A stretch of 61,583 nt of DNA, the filler included, from Sluysia triapertura (lineage: Eukaryota), in assembly GCA_046118255.1 (NCBI GenBank). It is 5 parts of 5 records of this genome, joined end to end, with 100 filler letters (N's around TTAATTAATTAA, not from the genome) between each part and the next. Parts side by side here need not be neighbours in the genome. Positions count along the whole stretch, not along the records: positions 24,069 to 34,975 come from JBJNIA010191706.1; 4 more parts are not named here. One strand, written 5' to 3'. The notes beneath the pieces were generated by a model that made no database searches, was not told the DNA's origin, and saw only the letters and a list, made by a program, of their open reading frames with translations. Below are positions 22,501-34,975 of this stretch, one piece after another (position 1 is the stretch's first letter; each line of letters opens with the position of its first letter). The translations under genes and the position numbers were made by a program.

Positions 22501-24565
22501 ATACTATCCCAACTATGTACCAAACTGATGTGACTCATTTTTCTGATTAACTAACCACTAAAATCGACGCTGAATACTTAAAATAAGACCCCGTGAAAAT
22601 AACATTAGCTCCATACATGTGTAAATACTAAAACTAATCCATATCCAATTTATTAACATCAAGTACAAATTTCATATATTATTCACTCTAACCAAAACCC
22701 AATAAACATTCAACCAATGAGAATTAAATCCATAATAAGAGTAAACCAGTAACCACACATTCCCTCTATTGGTAAAACGAATATTACTTTTAGTTTTCTT
22801 AAATAAGAATTAAAAAATGTAAAAATACACATTTTAAAAATATACTGTTCAGGAAAATTATAATACATTTATTCGAACACAAAAGTAAAAAAAATGATCC
22901 AACAATGTATTTAGTAATTTCGAAACAAAGAATCGTTGAAATTTATTAATAATTGTATAATTACGTGCAGAGTTTTCAATGTTTAAGGCAAATTAAAATG
23001 CACATACTAAAGTTATTGAACCAAGCGAACTAAGAACAAAGCATAAAAATACATAATTTATGTAAACACTAAATAAAAGTCTTATGTAAATGCATAAAAA
23101 ATTTGAATTCGAAAGATTTTTGAAATAATTTTTAAATCAAAACTAATTGCATTATAAATTTATTTAGGATTGAAAAACACAAGACGTAATACCAATAATA
23201 TAAATCAACTAACTTTATCATTGTTGTACAAGTATTTATAATTTTCAAAAATGAATTAAAATTGATATAATTCTAAAATCTTCGAAGTTTTATACAAATA
23301 AACATTTATTAAATCAACAATGGTTTTACTTGTTTTACTTAACCATCAAACATAAAATAAATATTCCTCTTTATCTTATTTAATCAAACCAACTCAAACT
23401 TATATTTTGGACACACAGAGACTGCACTAAATGAAGTAGACCATCAATTATTTTTTTAGTTTAATAAAAATTAACGAATTTAAATTATTTCGGTTAATTG
23501 GATTATTTATATAGAGAAATCTTGTAGTGGTGTCATATTATTTAACTGAATATTTTTCATCTAATCAATAATTCTATTCTTACTTGTTTGTTTTACTACA
23601 TTAAAATACTAAAAATTAAAGAAACTAATTACATTATTTGTTTATATCGATGAAGTAAATAAATTTAATGACTACAACTTCAGATATATATTTTCCCGGA
23701 GCATTAAGCCTCCTTAACTGGACATATTTTATTGTCATTCTTTATAAGGGTTCTTTCTAAATTTCTTTTAAATTCCAATCCAAGTTATTACTATATTGTA
23801 ACATAGTGTTAATATATTTCAAATTTTTAAATTCTTAATTTAACACGTTCACGGACACCAAAAATGTTAGGTTAATCATGTGACATTGATTTTTTGATTG
23901 ACTAATATCGGTTTTACTTTAGTAATTAAATGTAATTATCTGTACTAATTAACATGAGGCTAACTGTCNNNNNNNNNNNNNNNNNNNNNNNNNNNNNNNN
24001 NNNNNNNNNNNNTTAATTAATTAANNNNNNNNNNNNNNNNNNNNNNNNNNNNNNNNNNNNNNNNNNNNTAAGTTAAGGCAAAGAATATTTTTTGTACGAT
24101 TAATTTTGATAATTGTTTTCACGTAATTTTACAGGTACGCCATTAGTAAGTCATATACTGTGAACGGACTCGTAACAATTAATTATTTTGCTGTAGGTTA
24201 GGTTTTTAGATTAAGAAAAACACCAGCAACTGCATAAGTCCCAAATAACACTGTCAATAAGAGAATAGAAAGTAAATTGCTCGAAAAAAATTCACATTTG
24301 CTTTTGTGGAGACAACGCCTGTATTGCTTGATCAATGGTGTTACAGATGAATTAAATCACGAGCAGTTGACTCTTCAATTTTTGACCATTTTAAAATACA
24401 CAATACTTTCAAGGTACCTTTGGTACTAAATTTAACTAATATTCTTTTAATAATTCATTATCCTCGAAAGATATCATCCGATAATGTAGCTATATCATGG
24501 TATGAAGTAAAAGTAATAGTACACCCTTGTGTAACATCAAGACTGATATCTTTATTGCAGTTTGG

Positions 24566-24610
<45 letters not shown>

Positions 24611-24611
24611 C

Positions 24612-24685
24612 TGTTAGACTTCAATAAGCGGACTGATCGGGATTCGAACCCGGAATTTCCCACTTCACAGCCGTGCAGTACGATG
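24612..24685 (-). mobile_element. tRNA-cassette element, 3' part only (cut at the retrotransposon insertion site)
   Basis: Minus strand CATCGTACTGCACGG..CCGGGTTCGAATCCCGATCAGTCCG..GAAGTCTAACA: B-box plus the family 3' terminus. Confidence 0.85.
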
Positions 24686-25338
24686 AATTCAATAGATGTA
24701 CTTTAAAATTATGACAAGGATTTTCAGAAATAGTATAAATATGAATAATAATTATAAAAATATGTATAAGGGATCAAAATAAATGTAAATAAGAATGTTT
24801 GTTGCTGGTTCTGCTGATTGAAGTACGTTAAGATTATTTATATACATTCATAAAGAAGAACATAGTTAAAATACATAGAAAGGGTAAAATATGTAAGGGG
24901 TATATAAAATATTCACAGAAAAAAGAAAGTTAAAGTATCATTTGATTATAGTTATATTTAACAAAAGATATACAAACCTTCATAAAAAAGGTGGAGGGAA
25001 ATATTGGAATAATTTAACAATTCATTACATAAAGGACAAATTGGAAGATTTACAAACATCCATATAAGAATAGAAGTAATTGTGGTTGTGTGGTATTGTA
25101 AAATTCAAAGGATTTTATTAATGTATTAAAGGGGGGTAAAGAAAGAAGCACAATATTATTCACCACACAAAAGAAAAGGAAACCCCAGGTAAGATAATTT
25201 ATAGTTAAGTGAAATATTGAAGGAAATGATCCTTAAATGATTATTAAAGGAAAGTTCTAGGGATAGTTTGATACATTAGCGTGCCAAGCCAGTAGTATCA
25301 GCTTTATGGAAACTTAACTTTTTAAGGACAGAATCATG
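24686..25338 (-). mobile_element. 5'-truncated RLE non-LTR retrotransposon (C-terminal codons plus 3' UTR)
   Basis: HDSVLKKLSFHKADTTGLAR*CIKLSLELSFNN aligns with NGKLLKPLGFHR..LAVESSNN of the 43389 element. The 3'-terminal 14 nt match that element at 11/14, and the target junction is the same. Confidence 0.6.
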
Positions 25339-25365
25339 TTATATTTTAATACTTAATCATTTATA

Positions 25366-25534
25366 TAATAGACTTCATAAAATGTACTGACCTGGAATCG
25401 AACCAGGAACCTCTTACTTCACAACTGTGTAGTTCAACCACTGAGCTATCAGCCCCATCTAACAACTTCATTTTATTATAGTCAATTGTATTATCATTAT
25501 TCTAATTGCCACTTTTTAGGCCCATACCTCAACA
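25366..25534 (-). mobile_element. tRNA-cassette element, full-length copy with a ~7-nt deletion in the D-stem
   Basis: TGTTGAGGTATGGGCCTAA..GTTAGATGGGGCTGATAGCTCAGTGG..GGTTCGATTCCAGGTCAGTACATTTTATGAAGTCTA. Confidence 0.85.
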
Positions 25535-27359
25535 ATATTATATTGTTATTATTAAATTTTGAAGAATGTTTACAAATTATTCTACCATCAACATCCAACT
25601 ACAACAAATGGATCCAAATTTTCGTATAATTTTGCTTCTGGTCCCATTGTATGTCTAGTAGCACATGCAGTACCTTCAATTATTCGCGATGTTATGGTAC
25701 CCGAAAAATATTTCATTGTTTAAAATGACAATGTATCATTTTTTTTAACTAATATCACTATTCTTTTTTCTAAAATAATGTCACCATTACTGAAATACTT
25801 CTAGCATACTTCTAGCCAATGAAATATGAATTAGCCTTGATGTAGCCAATTAACATTGTTTAGAAAAGCACAATTTAAACATTATGTTACAATGGTGATA
25901 AAATGTTTTTTGTAAATAGAAGCCTAGATGCCATTTTGAATTAATATAACAATAATAATAATTATTATTATTGTTCGATTATATTAATTTATTGTTATTA
26001 TTGTATTTGTTTTAATTTTCTTTTAATTTCTCAATCTTTTATAAATTAAACTTTGTTTTCTGTGGAGAATATAAATGAAGTTATTTGAAGTATTCTGTTA
26101 AATGTTGAAAGACTTATCAGAGATTATTTAATAAGTTACTAACGTACGATTTCGAAGTGATTATGATTTAAATGAATGCTAAACATGTAAAGTACAAGAT
26201 TAATTAATGATTTAAAATTGAATAATGCAAACATTATGATGAATAAAAATGATGATGAATAGGATTTGAAAAATAGGATTTGAAACATAGGATGCTTTAA
26301 TGAATACTACTGACAATGAAGGTTTAAGATAGTTTACTTAATAATTCCGTTTTAGGTTTGTTTAGACGTCACAAAATTTTGCTAACGGTTTCATTTTTTC
26401 TACAAATTTGTCATTTTGAACCTAAAGATAGTTTTCTTGAAGTTTTTGTACAATTGCTACGATTCTGATAGCTGTGTATTGTCATTAGGAAGCTGAATAT
26501 TTATTTATTATAGAAAACGCTTTAAAATCTTCGTTAATATTTATTTATTTGAGTGTTTAATGTAGTTTGATAAATTTAAATTATTATGATAAAATTAAGG
26601 ATGACATTATTTAACAAGAACGTTACGATAATAAATGTTGAAAGGTATTATGAATTAAGAGTTATGAAGAATTTTGATGTTCACGATAAAATGTCGAAGA
26701 ATGTTAAAACATAATATTTCAAGATTTAGTGATTGTAAAAATAAGATGAATTTTGTGCGATGATTAAATTAAATGTTTATTGTGATTTGTGACTTATGTA
26801 ATATATATTGTGCATTATGAGTTGACCTATGGAAAAAGAGAGAGAGATTTAAATTTCGAATTATTATTAGGCCCAGATAAATATGGGGTAGTTTATTAAT
26901 TTTCATGATTAATAGGTATTTATATAATAATTAAAATAATTGCATTAATAATATCTCAAGTACTATAGGTTCTCGAAATTTATAGAATTTCAGGGTTTAC
27001 TTGGAAAATAATAATTGATTGACTTCCATTTTTGGAAAAGTATTCGCAAATAAATGCTTTAAAGAAAGAAAGAAGATAAATCGAAAGTATAACGTCAGAG
27101 AAAATATAAAATGAAGAAAATAAAGTGGAAGAATGTTATATTTGAAGGATTAGTGATTGTGAATGAGTGAATTACATATTGTATTGTCACTCATGACATA
27201 CGGACTGTTTATGTAATACATATTGGTGATAACCTTATGCGTTATTTCTTGATTATTTTAGTGTTATAAAAATCAAAATATTTATGAAAATGTTCAAAAA
27301 TTAATTAGCAGCAAAAAATAATTTCCGTAAATAAATAAGATATAAAAAAATCTTTATAT

Positions 27360-28266
27360 AAACTGCGATCTGTTGATATCCAGCATCTTGTTATAAAATG
27401 GAATTACGTTGTCATTATATCTGCTCAACATTTTATCAACATCATTTCGGTGGCCTTAATTACTCCAAAAAATTGGATTCATAGCTGAGAGACCCAAAAT
27501 ATCTTGCGATGACGGAATAGGAGTCGTTTTGATTCAGTGAAGTGCTTGAACTTATCTCCATCATGGCAGACATCACTTTGAGAGATAATAGCTTTGACTT
27601 GTATAAAAGCCTTTGTATTTCTTGGGGAATATCCATACGATATTAAAGCCAGTTTCATTAAGAAATATTGATTTCTCCATTTGGAAATTAACCCTATTTT
27701 ATTTCCATTGAATTCTCTACAGGTCCTATTTAATTCCAGCGAAAACACAAAATTTTCACAATTAAATGCTTGACTCAAAAAACATACTCAAATCGAATTT
27801 AAGTTATTTATTTATTAATTTAATTATGTTTGTGTTATATTTATGTAATATTTACGTAATATAAAAATTGTAATGTTGGACCTCAAAGGGTTAAAGAATA
27901 TTCCTGAAATTGTGGTAACGGAAATCCAGTATTATTTCGTATTTTTGTGATGTTTTAAGCCTTGATTTCATTATATACAAAGGATTGACAAAAGATTTAT
28001 GCGATTTTGTCCCTTATCTCAGCCTTTCCAGTATGTTTGTTTCCTTCCTTTTTAGTGATATAATTTCATTATCAGTTACATCCTTATACATCTTCATAAC
28101 AAGAGACAGAAATATTCAGAGATGCAGCGATTGACTTATTATTGTTGCCTGCCTCTAGTTGACTCTTTGCAACTTTCAACAGTCGAGGATGGTCACAGTC
28201 GTTCGTGACTGTCTCGCATTTTTTATACATTTTTATAACGATAAATGTTTGATATTTCCTAATCAA
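27360..28266 (-). mobile_element. Decayed Tc1/IS630-family transposase
   Basis: HTH-like LEAGNNNKSIAASLNISVS; FLNETGFNI (DETGFN motif) followed by YGYSPRNTKA; SQL/NPI/FFGVIKA (SPxLNPIE motif). Many frameshifts. Confidence 0.7.
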
Positions 28267-28663
28267 AGTTTTGTATTTCGTTCGTATGTATTGGATAAGC
28301 CATAATCAGAATCGACCCTATTGAATAAAGTAAATAAATAAATAAATAAATAAAATAAATAAACGAATAAAATGTTGTAAAAATTAATGAAATAAAAAGA
28401 AAAAAAGTGAAAAATAATTTTTAGTATAATTAAAACAATTAAATATTTTTGAAATATTTGCTTTTTATTAACTTTTATTTATTTTATTATGAGTTTTATA
28501 TTTGAAAAATTAATTTTTTATCGACAAAAATTGTAACAATTCAGCAAATAAGCTTAATTAATTAATTGAAAAACTGAATTATTATTAAATAAAGTCACAG
28601 CGAAACTTTTGTGAGGCACGGCTGTCGTTAATGTGTGATTTGATGAATTGTCGTTTGATGAAA

Positions 28664-29262
28664 GGGTGTCGTTTGTCTATGTTATGAATATCTGATTTCA
28701 TTAAGACGTGAAGGACATAGAAACTCACATAATTTATTACTGTCTGGTCTAATTATAAAGAATTATTTCCATTTTCAAATTTGAAGAAGGTGCCATTTAA
28801 TAAAATTGACTATAATAAAATAAAATCGTTAGACGGGGCTGATAGCTCAGTACTAAAGCATCTAACTGCGCAGCGAGAGGTCCCTGGTTCGATCCCCGGT
28901 CAGTCCATTTTATGAAGTCTAACATATACTGTATTTTATTTTAGAGGCAAAAATGTGATTTATAGAAATATACATCTACCTAAGTCGAATTTCTATTCCT
29001 TACTAAAAATAATCAAGTTAGAGAAAATATTACATTTTAGCAATTCCTTTTTTATAGAAGTTTTACTGTACAATTTCTACTAGGAGATTAAAATGAAACA
29101 TTTTGTGCAAAATGCCAATTGAAATTTAAATTTCGTAAGCGAAATAAACATAGAGACAGCTTCAAATTGCAAGAAGATCTTAACTTACAGAAGGATAATA
29201 ATGTATTTCGTTCTAAATGCAAGAAGAATGTGTTTTTAAATTTTATTATTGCTAAAATATTG
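28664..29262 (+). repeat. Duplicated segment, paralogous to 49068-50058; this copy carries the tRNA-cassette insertion
   Basis: Shared blocks atctgatttcatt, ggtctaattataaagaattattt, aagtcgaatttctattcc, ttttactgtacaatttctactaggag and aaattttattattgctaaa. Confidence 0.85.
28792..28924 (+). mobile_element. tRNA-cassette element, 5'-truncated copy (tRNA-like core 28836-28907)
   Basis: GGGCTGA/TCAGTCC acceptor stem, A-box TAGCTCAG, B-box GGTTCGATCC, TTTT terminator and a GTCTAACA end. The anticodon arm does not pair. Absent from the paralogous site at ~49745. Confidence 0.88.
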
Positions 29263-32200
29263 TTCTAAAACAAAATAATTAATCATTATTAATCAGATAA
29301 ATTATAAATTTCTTAGTATTTCTTATTACTAGTATGTAATTAATATATTTTGAATATTTTAAATTATTGGCACTTATTCAATCATTTATCTATTTCGATT
29401 ATTTATTTATCTCTGAAATATAATGAATCAAGTTTATATGGGTTTATGTGAAATCTCATGTTCCTATAAAAAATTTTATTAAATTAATTTATTTACTTTT
29501 GTTTAATTTCGTATGCAAACACGAAAACTTAAAAATTTCTATTACAAATTCTTTTTAAAATACTAATTGTTTTTACAAAATACAAATAATGTATATATAT
29601 GCACGCAAATTAAGTTGATATATACATATTTTAAAGTTAAAATTATTTTAGCTGGAAAATACAGAAATATTTTTTTTGCAAGTTAACTTAGTTTACAACT
29701 GAAGTTTTATTGTTATTATAAAATGTTATAAAAGTTATTGTTATAAAATGTTCTTATTTTATCCACACAAAAATAAAATGATTATATATGGATGGCTAAG
29801 AACCATAATTAAAAAGGCAAATAAATTATTATAATAAAAATTTCAAATGAAAATTATTGTTATAAAATAGTTACGTTATTATTCATAGCAGTTTTTATTC
29901 TTATAATTTACAGGTTATTATAAATTATTATTATTATTATAAGAAATAACATCTACAAATAAATGTAATATTAAAAACCCATAGTTTTTGCAACTAAAGT
30001 GATGAGGTATCGATCCATTAAGACAATTGAGTTTGCTTATGTAGCATTTATAAAATTGCTACGGAATTGAAAATCGAATATAATTAATTTGTCGGTCTTA
30101 AGTCGACCAGATTTAATAATTAAAAATTTAACATTAATTTACTTCAAATTTATCCTTCCAAAAATAATAGAAATTTCTGTTTTATCTAAATACAGGAAAA
30201 CAAAATCAAATTTTGTTGGATTGTTGATGAGAATAATTATATGAATCCACAAAAATACATTCAAATTATGTTTTGATAGAAAATTTGATAGAAAAAATTA
30301 CAAAATCGATAATGGATTGAAAATTTAAAGTAATAATCAAAAAAAATGTCTAACCTCAAACGTAAAATAAAACCAAGAGATTATTAGATAAATTTGACGA
30401 AATGAATTAATTCTACATCCAATTTGTAGTTCGGATTATTTCTTGTTTCCGTTAGTAGTACATTTTTTAATAACGATGACCTAAAAAAAATGACTCATTG
30501 GAAAAATTAAAAAGAACACGACGTATTTACATTGCTAATAATAAATAAATAAAATATTCAGATAATATATTACTCATCAACATATTTATTTCGATAATTT
30601 GTTCGAAATATGTTGTTATTTTGTTTACATTATTTACTACGTATAATAATTAATGAGTATAAATTATTACCATTTTCAAATATCAATTTCATTTTTACTT
30701 CAATTGTATTAAATTAAAAAGCCCCGAAACACTATAGATATCATGTTACCGTTCTTTACTTCAGTAGTCATAAGTTAGTTCTAATTACAAAGGTGTTGGG
30801 TATTTTTTGTTGGGTTAAGATAAAATTATACAAAATGATTTTAAAATATTACTTAAATTTTATCTTATAAGCTTTATTTACTTGAACAAATACGAGATTA
30901 TCGTAGAATTGGTAATCCAAAAATGTCTTCTATTTATCAACAATATAAACATATAGTTACCTAATAAACAAGATTGATGAAGTAAATAATCGTTTTATTT
31001 CTTTTGTATTTGATTGTTCTAATGTATAGTTTCTTTTCTTATTTGGATTTCATCTGATAAATGATAATATATTAATATATTTTATTTATTGATTAATTTA
31101 TTTTATTCTATGTTATAAATGTAATTAAATTTTGTAAATAATTTTTTATTTAATTTTATGCAACTTTCAATGAGTCAAAATTGTATGCTGAAAACCATAC
31201 TCCATTTCTTACATATTTACATCACAATAACCTTTTCAATGGCTTTTTTTTGTATTGTTGGTGTTTCTTTGTTAATTTACACGAACATAGAAATCAATTA
31301 TGGGTTCGCCTATAACTTTTGGTTTATTTCGCTAAGGAAGACACAATTACAGAATTTTATATTTATTTAAATCTTACTGCAGAACAAAGAACAATTTAAA
31401 ATGTCTTTGTCGTGAGGGTCTTTCTATAAATTCTTGAAATCTATCAATAAATAATAATTTTCTCTTCTATTTATTAAATTCTTAATTTTAGAAATATTGT
31501 ATTTAACTCAAACGTTACTTATTTTAAAAGTTGGTCTTAAATCTTTTGAATAAACTATTACTAGAAAAACATTTCTATTAATTTATTAATAGCAACCAAA
31601 TAAATAATGAAATTTTTATTGTAAAACAAAGTAATAAATAATGATTAAACAGATTACAAAAGAATTTACAAAAATTATAATAAAATATATATTATAAATT
31701 AATCAGAATATTTGGTTTGTAAAACAGAATTAGATTTTAAGTTAAAATTTAACGCTAAAATTATCAAAACGACCTTACAAATTATTAACTTACGCAACAA
31801 TTATGATTTGAGAAAATAGCTTTGTCAAACGAAGATTCACTCGTGTATTTTCAATTTTAAAAATTTCCACCAAATTGATATAACAAGTCACATCGAAAAT
31901 TGAAATCCGTTGTATCTACGTTATCAATTTTCGAAAATAAAATGAATATATTTCAGTTATGAATTAAACATATGTTTCTCAAACCATAAATTAAAATAAT
32001 ATATTATTTTTTATATCTATAAACCATATTTTCTGACTTTATAAATAAATTATAAGGAAACATCACCAAAATAATTATAAAATATTAACACAAAATTTAT
32101 TGCAATGTAATTTTAAAATTTATAAAATTTTATTTTACAAAATAAAAATATTGTTAAAAATTTTTGTTAAATTGTTTAAATACAAATACAAAAATATTAT

Positions 32201-32916
32201 AATGTTATTCCACAATATCAACTTTTACTAGAAATTAATCTTTTTAGCAGCTTCAGTTACACAATTAATCATTGTTATTGTCATCATTATTCATGCTGCT
32301 ATTGCTGATTTATAACACAATGAATTCTCCATGGAATTAAATACTTCAAAATATGGATTCTTTAATTCTTATTTAGCTTGATTTGAAACAATGTATGTAC
32401 TGGTTTATTTCTAATCTCACGTCTTTATTCTAACTGATTTCAAACTTTAATTCTTCTTGAGATTTCTTTTGATATTATTTTCCTTAATCTTTCAACTTAT
32501 AAAATAAATTTGATAGTTATATTTATATTTCTATACTCATGCACTATTATTGTAAGTATTAATTTTACATTTATAAAGTACTTTAAAGTATGTTTTCTAT
32601 GATTCTTTATTAACTTCAAATTCCTAAGTATTAATCTAATGAATTTTCACATTAATTTTCTGTACTTTTAGCCTACAATTAGTAGATTTAATTTAATTTA
32701 AATATCTTCTTTAACCTAAAATATGAGTTCGATACTCGTCCCTGTTCTCAGAGGTGGAAGTGCCATTTCTTTTTAGCAAAAACTTTTTGTAAATTTATCC
32801 TATTTCTCAATCCCAAAAACAAAACTTTATTCAAACAATTTCAATAAAGAGAATTAAATTGTTAACAAATAAAAATTCTGTAATTCTAATTTTGTAATTA
32901 TTGATAAAAGTTTATA

Positions 32917-33062
32917 CAGGGTTCCGCCTTTATTTCAATTTTGTCATAATTATTAAATTTTATTAATTCTTATTTCATTAAAACTTAAATTCAAATTTTA
33001 TAAAACTTAATTATTCTTTTTGAACTGAAGTTTGACAAAATTGAAATAAAGGCGAAAATAAG
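32917..33062. mobile_element. Tc1/mariner-type MITE
   Basis: Perfect 22-bp inverted repeat CGCCTTTATTTCAATTTTGTCA (32925-32946 / 33033-33054), a TA|CAGGGT start and TA at the symmetric right position. Confidence 0.65.
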
Positions 33063-34353
33063 TAAAAAAAATTTTGTTGAAGATTTTTATATTTAATAAG
33101 CTACTTAGAATAATAATTATATCAGAACAACAATTAAGACTTGATCTGAGGATCTTTTATGTAAAACTAATCGATCAGAAATAAATTATCTGTAATCAAA
33201 TTGTTCCTTGCTCGATCTAGTAAAACTCGTTCTATCATTTATGTGCTTTTTGATTTATTTATTATTTTTATTATGACGTAGCTTATTAAATTTCAAAAAT
33301 GTACTTATATAAGTACATACAATTACCGCATTGAATTTCGTATTAAATTTTGTAATAATGAATAAGTGAATCAAATTTCTATACCTGCAATTAAAATTAA
33401 ATACAAATGCACAAATACAGTATTTTATTCACAATATTCATTAAGTTTTGATTCGTACATTCATTCATTTGTTACGTGGCTCGTCATTTTTATACATTTT
33501 TTAAATTTATTTATGGCTCACTATTTACAATGTTGCACTAATATCAAACATTCGTTTAATTGTTTTAATTGTTCATTTAATATTAAATGTGGCTCGTCAT
33601 CATCATACAACGTTCGCATTTAAATTAAACATTAGATTATATCAAACGTACATATTTTATTACCACAGACACAAGAATTCGTTTTCATAATTTATTTTCG
33701 AATATTCGAATGAAGCATTACATTCATAGCTTATTTTAACATTGATAAGTTATTGACAAACATTCGATTAGAGCATTACAGTACAATTAAGATCTTCTTC
33801 CATGTTCATTTTGGAATTCGAGCGGAATCATTTGTTTTGTATTTTTAATTTCGTTTCAATCACGTTCTATATGTTCGAAAACGATATTATAAAATAAGCG
33901 ATAGAGAAAATGTCTCACAAAAATGACTAATGAAATCAATGATATAGTGTGAAATGTCTAATCAGTAATGGCATACATCAAATATTGTTTGTTTTACCGC
34001 AATATTTTTATTAAATGATAAAGTCTATTTCATTGAATATTTATTTTTAACTTTCTCGTTTGTTTTTCATTATGTTTATAAATTATTCATGTGGAAGTTT
34101 ATTGTTTAGTTCTGTATTCATTATGATAAATTGTGTTTTTAATTTATTTTTAAAGAAAAATGTAATCAATAATTGAAAGGTATTATTAACATTAAATTAT
34201 CTTTTTCAAAAATTAGTAAGAGTGAAAATAAAGACTAAAACTATTTATTTTGTTTAGAATTACACAAAAAACAAATATTTTTACAAATCGTTTTGTTAAA
34301 TTCTGATTATGCCATGATATAAATTCAAAAGTTTGTTTTTGTCTCTTGTTGTA

Positions 34354-34975
34354 TCACTCGATCAGATGGGATGCTAGTACAATTGTAATTGAAAACTTTT
34401 GCATGTCAGGTAAGATTGCCAAACTTGATAAAAGAGAATTGATTCTATCATAGTGGTCATAGAAATTTGCTGGATGACTATGAACATATTTGAATTCACA
34501 TATTTGGTGGAAATATCTACAATTCTTGCCATATTTTAAACATTCACCAGACTGAGCAGTTTTATATAAACAAAGAGCCATCTTGTAGTGTTTGTCTTCA
34601 TTAACACATGGATTTATGTGTAAAGGTTTGCTACTACTATAGAAGAACTTTAAAAGGCCGATTTTTGATTTTACATTCGACAAGTCTGTACTTAATAATG
34701 CTACTTTATTTTCATGACAAATGAATCAACATCTACTAATTTGTGAGCAGTTAGAAATGCATTAGTAGGTATTTGTATAACTTGACCATCTACTGTCACA
34801 ATTAATCTATCAATACTTTTATCTTCCTTTATCATTTTTTAATTCAATGCATAGGCTTGATTTAAAACTGAAATTATCACTTTTTTGACGTTTTTACTAA
34901 TCGTAATAAGTTCTTTCGATTGAGATGGATAGAATTGTGCAGTTAAACTTTTTGTATTAATATTTTGCACTAATC
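34354..34975 (-). pseudogene. Decayed gene with a CCCH zinc finger (related to 11252-11551)
   Basis: LCLYKTAQSGECLKYGKNCRYFH (C-x9-C-x6-C-x3-H). The upstream coding-like frame has a stop and a frameshift and runs to the gap. Confidence 0.55.

What the first reader, a model, noticed from the sequence alone, without database searches (positions are those of the whole stretch)
24612..25338. Second, diverged retrotransposon at the identical target nucleotide
Seen: the cassette at 24612 breaks after gtacgatg (24685), the same position as gttcgacg (43388). The adjoining sequences match at 11/14 (attcaatagatgta vs attaaaaacatgta). 25338-25240 on the minus strand encodes HDSVLKKLSFHK..LAR*CIKLSLELSFNN, similar to the other element's C-terminus, but the 3' UTR is much longer (~550 vs ~90 nt). 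The target is a different cassette subtype (..GTGAAG.. arm rather than ..CGCAG..). Inference: this is an independent insertion by a second subfamily, showing conserved target specificity and a conserved 3'-terminal RNA motif.
Basis: partly seen in the sequence, partly recalled or inferred. Interest (0 to 1): 0.8.

Follow-up and report, generated by a model that had tools for sequence, protein, structure and literature searches.

The report
Truncated retrotransposon tail ending in tRNA-like module
A 5'-truncated copy of a moderately repeated retrotransposon-like element ends, at a fixed nucleotide, in the last 74 bases of a hugely abundant tRNA-like short repeat; this piece is more likely the element's own 3' end than a hit target, so it is an ordinary LINE/SINE-type relationship with an unusual shared part.

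Summary
The sequence facts hold. A tRNA-like cassette copy (24612-24685, minus strand) lacks its first ~25 tRNA positions and leader. Two complete copies lie at 25362-25493(-) and about 28776-28927(+).

In the only public run holding this DNA, the cassette is SINE-like, with tens of thousands of copies. 24686-25323 is a separate repeat of very roughly 100 copies. Two contigs run on past 25323 in an open frame, which suggests our copy is 5'-truncated.

The coding evidence is thin: 20 codons, an in-frame stop that is CAG in most related contigs, then 39 more codons. No RT or RLE sequence is present or could be retrieved.

"Independent insertion at a conserved target nucleotide" is not shown. The upstream flank is a complete, different cassette, not the missing 5' half. 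The 74-nt piece has the element's copy number, not the cassette's, and shows no private differences.

- Most likely (0.5): the 74-nt module plus (TAA)15 is the element's own 3' end, shared with or captured from the cassette.
- Rival (0.3): true site-specific insertion, as known for tRNA-gene-specific NeSL-related LINEs of planaria, which enter near the same tRNA position.

Either way this is a variant of known kinds. No further copies could be fetched.

The parts
24566..24609 (-). Perfect (TAA)14.7 microsatellite (ATT on the + strand). It follows the 3' end of the tRNA-like module after two bases. Candidate retrotransposition tail or target microsatellite.
   Evidence: TRF: period 3, 14.7 copies, 100% matches. 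Single-copy DNA follows (contig 24212-24535, depth 14.3; table 8).
24612..24685 (-). 74-nt tRNA-like module c1: anticodon-arm remnant, B-box/T-arm (GGTTCGAATCC), acceptor 3' strand and trailer GCTTATTGAAGTCTAACAG. It lacks the leader, A box and D arm.
   Evidence: Alignment A1; BLAST 75% to c2 and c3; pattern match. Estimated depth about 1070 in 24619-24662, against 1170 at 24690.
24686..25155 (-). AT-rich 3' untranslated region of the repeated element. The 3'-terminal ~175 nt is its best-covered segment. Other copies lack 95-228 nt between about 24855 and 25090.
   Evidence: Depth 1100-2400; joints 24854>24950 and 24860>25089; majority letters T at 24690 and 24701. No Rfam family, including the R2 element. 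No fold signal.
25156..25338 (-). Remnant of the element's C-terminal coding end: 20 codons, in-frame TAA at 25278-25276, 39 codons, then a stop at 25158-25156. Homology to other copies is shown only up to 25323.
   Evidence: Translation. 25276 T>C and 25278 A>G in 96-98% of depth, so the codon is CAG in most copies. Loose end at 25323 continues the open frame. No Pfam, PDB-independent or big-library match.
25339..25361 (-). AT-rich spacer between the complete cassette c2 and the truncated element. Not significantly like the cassette leader.
   Evidence: Local alignment against leaders: 30-55% of shuffles score as well.
25362..25493 (-). Complete cassette copy c2 (leader, tRNA-like part of GTGAAG subtype, trailer), immediately upstream of the element in its own orientation.
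   Evidence: Rfam tRNA 26.8 bits, below the gathering score. 80% identical to c3 over 132 nt.
28776..28927 (+). Complete cassette copy c3 (CGCAG subtype): about 60-nt leader, 72-nt tRNA-like part, TTTT, and trailer ATGAAGTCTAACA. Used as the reference for the cassette.
   Evidence: Rfam tRNA 31.6 bits; ARAGORN finds none. Six contigs skip 28776-28927/9. Summed depth 151,000-582,000.

Best explanation
Read on the minus strand, 25338 down to 24566 is one 5'-truncated copy of a non-LTR-retrotransposon-like family of very roughly 100 copies. Its parts are:
- the last codons of an ORF, already broken by a nonsense change;
- a 470-590-nt AT-rich 3' UTR;
- a 74-nt terminal module homologous to the 3' two-thirds of the very abundant ~150-nt tRNA-like cassette (B-box/T-arm hairpin, acceptor 3' strand, trailer GAAGTCTAACA);
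- a (TAA)15 tail.

On this reading the constant 'break' after 24685 is an internal boundary of the element, not a cleavage site used twice.

The module was either captured from a cassette in which an ancestor sat, or the cassette and the element share it by descent. In the second case the shared 3' end would be what lets the element's reverse transcriptase copy the cassette, as in LINE/SINE partnerships.

Shown: the homology, the exact boundary, the copy numbers, contigs crossing the junction, and the absence of a 5' half upstream. Suggested only: 5' truncation. Inferred: that the module travels with the element, that the element encodes RT, and that the cassette depends on it.
For: (1) Depth. 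After removing the masked (ATT)n and the single-copy part of the bin, I estimate a mean depth of about 1070 for 24619-24662. That compares with 1170 at 24690 and 1523 at 24701, while the cassette proper reaches 151,000-582,000 (tables 2, 3). So c1-like sequence appears to occur about as often as the element, leaving little room for free c1-like cassettes.

(2) No private differences. All 40 'other letter' rows shown have at least 93% of depth differing from the window. The element side has 11 such rows (24690-25295). The 67 covered module positions have none, although c1 differs from the other cassette copies at 25-29% of positions.

(3) The contig carrying the family's majority T at 24690 and 24701 runs 54 nt into the module, ending at 24632 (from_end 58 and 69).

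(4) No loose-end cluster at 24686 is among those shown, although clusters of only two contigs were shown (table 7).

(5) In the element's orientation the upstream flank is a complete cassette c2 plus 23 nt, not a 5' half. c1 and c2 are only 71-75% identical while the element copy shows about 2% private differences, so they are not a target duplication.

(6) c1 ends at the same nucleotide as the cassette family (24612-24613 against the loose-end boundary at 28924) and is followed by a perfect (TAA)14.7.

(7) Precedent: R2 families that carry target-derived (28S-like) sequence in their 3' UTR (PMC5035012).
Against: The depth and 'no private difference' arguments rest on binned, summed depths of Logan contigs and on my inference of how rows were selected. 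Most rows were hidden: 262 other-letter rows and 1953 loose ends.

The break lies within about 3 nt of where planarian LIN15_SM enters tRNA-Arg genes. That fits a real cleavage site.

That is simplest if cassettes are targets.

Upstream target loss of more than 100 bp is documented for some R2 families, so the missing 5' half is not decisive.

The cassette has TTTT right after its tRNA-like part and a conserved ~60-nt leader. Neither is expected of a Pol III SINE that needs the trailer for reverse transcription.

No RT was seen.
Confidence: 0.5

Rival explanations
1. A site-specific, RLE-type non-LTR retrotransposon nicked a resident cassette between tRNA positions 24 and 25 and inserted there by target-primed reverse transcription. 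On this view c1 and the (TAA)n are simply the downstream half of that cassette and its flank. The upstream half was lost when the 5' end of the truncated copy was joined.
For: The junction is exact. NeSL-related RLE LINEs specific for tRNA genes are documented: LIN15_SM in tRNA-Arg, LIN25_SM in tRNA-Glu and NeSL-1_TV in tRNA-Pro (PMC4640811). The LIN15_SM 3' junction sits at the D-loop/D-stem border, within about 3 nt of our position. Large upstream target replacement is known for R2. c1 ends exactly where cassettes end.
Against: No 5' half lies upstream; a complete, 71-75% identical cassette stands there instead. The estimated depth over c1 equals the element's depth, with no excess from uninterrupted c1-like cassettes. 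No position in c1 reaches the ~93% 'other letter' level. No loose-end cluster at 24686 is shown. No RT or RLE is seen in the piece, and none was retrievable.
Confidence: 0.3
2. Template-jump chimera. During retrotransposition of a cassette RNA fragment starting at position 25, the reverse transcriptase reached its 5' end and jumped to the 3' end of an element RNA. That gives an element/cassette-fragment/(TAA)n insertion. The junction would be constant because both RNA ends are defined.
For: The two parts are joined with no intervening tail. There is a fresh perfect (TAA)14.7, and the element part is 5'-truncated. The cassette's 3' part is 2.5-8 times deeper than its 5' and middle parts (582,000 against 151,000 and 71,000), so 5'-shortened cassette copies may be common. 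End-to-end template jumping is an established property of R2-type reverse transcriptases (general knowledge, not tested here).
Against: Independent chimeras would carry diverse cassette parts. That fits the depth and letter evidence no better than the target reading does. No evidence exists for a cassette RNA starting at position 25.
Confidence: 0.1
3. Chance neighbours. An ordinary 5'-truncated cassette copy landed next to an unrelated AT-rich repeat, and the shared break is coincidence.
For: 5'-shortened cassette copies seem common (depth profile). The coding evidence for the element is weak.
Against: Contigs from other copies of the repeat cross the same junction and continue at least 54 nt into the module, and depth is continuous across it.
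Confidence: 0.05

Closest known systems
tRNA-gene-specific NeSL-related RLE LINEs (LIN15_SM and LIN25_SM of the planarian Schmidtea mediterranea; NeSL-1_TV), Kojima & Jurka 2015, PMC4640811
   Same: A non-LTR element 3' end abuts the 3' part of a tRNA sequence at a fixed nucleotide in the D-arm region. The host DNA is AT-rich. Several target variants are joined at the same place.
   Different: There the flanks are genuine tRNA genes, and the 5' junction carries the upstream tRNA part, with a long duplication. Here the partner is a degenerate, very high-copy tRNA-like cassette. No 5' half is present, the 3' terminal sequence is unrelated, and RT/RLE are unseen.
[quoted passage not shown] 2016, PMC5035012
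   Same: A site-specific lineage whose own 3' end contains sequence homologous to what lies downstream of its insertion site, which blurs the line between element and target.
   Different: The target there is 28S rDNA and the elements remain rDNA-specific. Here the homologous partner is an interspersed repeat, and the copy sits in non-cassette DNA downstream.
LINE/SINE partnerships with a shared 3' end (for example tRNA-derived SINEs whose tails derive from LINE 3' ends; reviewed in PMC3747384 and PMC5786205)
   Same: A short, very abundant tRNA-related repeat and a longer, rarer element share their 3'-terminal tens of nucleotides and end at the same nucleotide.
   Different: In known pairs the shared part lies downstream of the tRNA-related head. 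Here it includes two-thirds of the tRNA-like part itself. The short repeat also has a 60-nt leader and a TTTT run before the trailer.
Dong / R4-clade elements associated with (TAA)n (general knowledge; Dong is cited in PMC4640811)
   Same: The copy is followed by a clean (TAA)n array.
   Different: There is no (TAA)n on the 5' side, and clade membership is untestable without the protein.

Membership tests
Non-LTR (LINE-type) retrotransposon | Reverse transcriptase ORF | tested here: inconclusive
   Only 60 broken codons remain in this copy. No Pfam hit. No hit for the 39-aa piece in 1.84 billion representatives. Word search of the X-joined 60 aa was blank. Longer copies could not be fetched.
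Non-LTR (LINE-type) retrotransposon | Many copies sharing a 3' end, with variable 5' truncation | tested here: inconclusive
   Depth is 1100-2400 over 24663-25256 against 10-20 for single-copy DNA. Two contigs run on past 25323 in an open frame. Indel variants occur in the UTR. The depth profile is a mosaic rather than a clean 3'-to-5' gradient.
Site-specific RLE LINE (R2/NeSL type) in a tRNA-like target | Restriction-like endonuclease domain | not testable with these tools
   The domain would lie 5' of the truncation point. No related protein or locus could be retrieved.
Site-specific RLE LINE (R2/NeSL type) in a tRNA-like target | Same 3' junction nucleotide in independent copies | tested here: inconclusive
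   The junction is exact here, and other copies' contigs cross it. Whether those copies are independent insertions cannot be told from contig summaries.
Site-specific RLE LINE (R2/NeSL type) in a tRNA-like target | Upstream half of the same target at the 5' junction | tested here: not met
   Upstream is a complete cassette c2 plus a 23-nt spacer. c1 and c2 are 71-75% identical. The spacer is not significantly leader-like.
Site-specific RLE LINE (R2/NeSL type) in a tRNA-like target | Downstream halves sample the diversity of the target population | tested here: inconclusive
   Leans towards not met. No position of 24619-24685 reaches the ~93% other-letter level, and the estimated depth equals the element's. 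Most rows were hidden, however.
LINE/SINE pair with shared 3' end | Homologous 3'-terminal sequence ending at the same nucleotide | tested here: met
   74 nt are 75% identical to c2 and c3. Both end at ...GAAGTCTAACA (24612-24613 and 28924).
LINE/SINE pair with shared 3' end | The short partner carries an internal Pol III promoter and is far more abundant | tested here: met
   A box TAGCTCAGTGG is in c2, and B box GGTTCGANNCC is in all three copies (read). Depth is 151,000-582,000 against 1100-2400. Caveat: a conserved leader and a TTTT run before the trailer.
Functional tRNA gene | Cloverleaf recognised by tRNA finders | tested here: not met
   ARAGORN finds none. Rfam tRNA scores 31.6 bits for c3 and 26.8 bits for c2, against a gathering score of 29, with unpaired anticodon stems.
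Dong/R4-type (TAA)n-specific element | (TAA)n on both sides of the insertion | tested here: not met
   (TAA)14.7 lies only on the 3' side. The 5' side is irregular AT-rich sequence.

The most novel reading that the evidence does not exclude
The abundant tRNA-like cassette and this element are one system. The full-length element would carry the cassette leader plus tRNA positions 1-24 at its 5' end and positions 25-72 plus trailer at its 3' end. The ~150-nt cassette would then be its internal-deletion derivative, in which the two halves rejoin into an A-box/B-box Pol III unit. That would be a retrotransposon built around a split tRNA-like gene. It would explain why each element subfamily matches its own cassette subtype and why the 'break' is always at the same nucleotide.
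Probability: 0.15. Interest if true: 0.6.

Novelty: new member of a known kind. Interest (0 to 1): 0.35.

Why it matters
The two readings carry different consequences.

If the module is the element's own 3' end, this locus names the likely autonomous partner of a repeat present in tens of thousands of copies. It would also be a LINE/SINE pair whose shared part reaches into the tRNA-like head.

If it is a true target, a tRNA-site-specific LINE lineage has moved from tRNA genes to a SINE-like copy of one. That would give it a very large supply of harmless landing sites.

Both are refinements of known retrotransposon biology rather than a new principle. The practical point is that a constant element/repeat junction is not by itself evidence of target specificity.

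Tried and rejected
Routes to more copies all failed.
- The cassette T-arm+trailer pattern and the D-arm/anticodon pattern are absent from viral, metagenome and genome contig collections.
- Word protein searches were blank for the junction-spanning ORF 24624-24773(-), the CCCH ORF 34357-34725(-) and the X-joined 60-aa C-terminus.
- The 20-aa piece is below the tool's minimum length.
- The full HMMER search of the 39-aa piece gave 0 hits.
- Eight window ORFs are not in the protein collection, so the look-up of encoding contigs had nothing to look up.
- Only one run holds the DNA, and only as contigs.

Ideas tested and rejected.
- c1 and c2 as a long target duplication, as LIN15_SM makes: rejected, because they are only 71-75% identical against about 2% private divergence in the element.
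- The 23-nt spacer as a remnant of c1's leader: not significant.
- Tandem repeats inside the UTR to explain the length variants: not significant (TRF).
- A conserved 3' RNA fold: z-scores -0.3 to +0.6.
- R2 RNA element or other Rfam families in the UTR: none.

Other blanks. The phage collection had no match. Full-text searches for cassette sequence strings found no paper. The organism was not identified: names are coded, and a planarian is only a guess from AT-richness and the literature parallel.

Full report
**What is in the piece**

The 10.9-kb piece (24069-34975) is AT-rich (20-31% GC), eukaryote-like DNA without long ORFs.

Rfam's tRNA model matches 28836-28907(+) at 31.6 bits and 25383-25455(-) at 26.8 bits, against a gathering score of 29. 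ARAGORN accepts none. Repeat finding, alignment and BLAST give three copies:
- c2, 25362-25493(-), complete;
- c3, about 28776-28927(+), complete;
- c1, 24612-24685(-), only the 3' 74 nt.

The two complete copies share a conserved leader upstream of the tRNA-like part, then a 72-nt tRNA-like part with A and B boxes, then TTTT, then the trailer ATGAAGTCTAACA. The shared leader is about 38 nt between c2 and c3. It is about 60 nt if judged from the contigs that skip 28776-28927.

**Abundance**

Only one public run holds this DNA, and only as Logan contigs. I laid it on 24069-30000.
- Single-copy stretches have contig depth of about 10-20.
- The cassette reaches summed depths of 151,000 (D arm), 71,000 (anticodon region) and 582,000 (T arm).
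- This points to tens of thousands of copies, with 3' parts in excess. The repeat is SINE-like.
- 24663-25256 has depth 1100-2400, very roughly 100 copies at 80% identity or more.

So the stretch between c1 and c2 is a distinct, moderately repeated family.

**The observation**

The run's majority cassette reads ...GCTCAGT GGTCAGAG CATCGAACTGCACAGCTGTGAA (loose-end consensus at 28851). c1 reads CATCGTACTGCACGGCTGTGAAG and is preceded by unrelated ...CTATTGAATT. The break is therefore exactly after 24685, between tRNA positions 24 and 25.

The quoted translation is right, but it is 20 codons between two stops. The TAA at 25278-25276 is CAG in 96-98% of the depth of related contigs (25276 T>C, 25278 A>G; table 3). 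The frame then runs 39 more codons, to 25158-25156.

Two contigs continue beyond 25323 with sequence that keeps this frame open (...SWDPENDILL|KKLSFHK...). This suggests the copy is 5'-truncated at about 25323-25338. A more abundant related family (depth about 4000) shares only 25268-25323.

Other copies lack 95-228 nt of the UTR (joints 24854>24950 and 24860>25089).

None of the peptide pieces matches Pfam. The 39-aa piece has no match in the 1.84-billion representative library, and the word-indexed collection gave nothing. The claims that involve the other element lie outside my piece.

**Target or own 3' end?**

Read on the minus strand, the order is: complete c2, a 23-nt AT-rich spacer, the truncated element, c1, (TAA)14.7 (perfect), then single-copy DNA.

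A simple insertion into a cassette should leave the cassette's leader and positions 1-24 at the 5' junction. They are absent from the piece, and the spacer is not significantly leader-like. c1 and c2 cannot be a long target duplication of the kind LIN15_SM makes. They are only 71-75% identical, while the element copy shows about 2% private differences.

The contig evidence points the same way.
- I removed the masked (ATT)n and the single-copy part of bin 24465-24662. The estimated mean depth over 24619-24662 is then about 1070, against 1170 at 24690 and 1523 at 24701.
- Depth is therefore continuous across the junction, and there is no excess from free c1-like cassettes.
- All 40 'other letter' rows shown have at least 93% of depth differing from the window. 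The element has 11 such rows. The 67 covered module positions have none, although c1 is 25-29% different from c2 and c3.
- The contig with the majority T at 24690 and 24701 extends to 24632.
- No loose-end cluster at 24686 appears among those shown.

Taken together, c1-like sequence seems to exist about as often as the element and in the same, little-diverged form. That is what one expects if the module is copied along with the element.

**Why the rival stays alive**

RLE-type NeSL-related LINEs specific for tRNA genes are documented: LIN15_SM in tRNA-Arg, LIN25_SM in tRNA-Glu and NeSL-1_TV in tRNA-Pro (PMC4640811). In the supplementary junctions, LIN15_SM abuts three tRNA-Arg isoacceptors at the D-loop/D-stem border. 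That is within about 3 nt of our position.

Some R2 families replace more than 100 bp of upstream target, and some carry target-like sequence in their 3' UTR (PMC5035012).

My depth and letter arguments also rest on summaries in which most rows were hidden. A hybrid history would reconcile everything: a site-specific ancestor that came to carry the downstream half of its target.

**Mechanism proposed**

Shown: a 74-nt 3' module homologous to the cassette, a fixed internal boundary, a (TAA)n array after it, and contigs of other copies crossing the junction. Suggested by two contigs only: 5' truncation.

Inferred: the element's RNA ends in the module plus (TAA)n. Reverse transcription starts there by target-primed reverse transcription. 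The cassette, which has the same terminal B-box hairpin and trailer, is copied by the same enzyme.

Two features of the cassette do not fit a plain Pol III SINE and remain unexplained: the conserved leader and the TTTT before the trailer. No significant RNA fold was found for the module or the UTR end.

**Weights and verdict**

- Module is part of the retroposed unit: 0.5.
- True site-specific target: 0.3.
- Template-jump chimera: 0.1.
- Chance neighbours: 0.05.
- The remainder is unassigned.

Either main reading is a new member or variant of known kinds, so interest is moderate. The decisive analysis is a census of all genomic copies with their flanks. It could not be run because no further copy of this genome was reachable.

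Noticed in passing
window 24069-24266: The left edge of the piece is another extremely abundant repeat, with summed contig depth 240,622 against 10-20 for single-copy DNA. Near-fixed differences from the window occur at 24153, 24162 and 24172. Its kind is unknown.
   Followed up: no
window 28776-28927 and flanks 28623-28775, 28928-29414: Cassette c3 sits inside other repeats (flank depths 8,000-29,000). Six contigs join 28775 directly to 28928/28930, skipping 152-154 nt with no shared letters at the joint. This looks like an empty site without a target duplication.
   Followed up: partly
window 28776-28835, 28908-28924; 25362-25382, 25456-25493: The cassette is not a canonical Pol III SINE. 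It has a conserved leader of about 38-60 nt. It also has a TTTT run directly after the tRNA-like part, and a 7-nt inverted repeat (GTTAGAC...GTCTAAC) bracketing that part. In c1 the TTTT is CTTATT.
   Followed up: partly
window 28836-28924 (depth profile): The T-arm region of the cassette is 2.5-8 times deeper than the D-arm and anticodon regions (582,000 against 151,000 and 71,000). This suggests many 5'-shortened copies, a hypervariable middle with two subtypes (GTGAAG and CGCAG), or both.
   Followed up: no
window 27460-28310 (minus strand): A run of broken ORFs. One has a weak helix-turn-helix-like match (GerE, E 0.027; 28087-28305). They overlap a repeat of depth about 33,000 (27633-27830). 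Two contigs skip 27620-28215 / 27635-28224, about 590 nt. This may be a decayed DNA-transposon gene with a nested insertion.
   Followed up: partly
window 34357-34973 (minus strand): A 123-codon open frame with a CCCH zinc-finger-like motif (PF25427, E 1.6e-5, below the cut-off). It is preceded by two shorter frames in other phases and runs off the edge of the piece. No homologue was found by the word search.
   Followed up: partly
window 32911-33068: An inverted repeat with 41-nt arms, 80% complementary, 76 nt apart. Possibly a small foldback or MITE-like element (I7).
   Followed up: no
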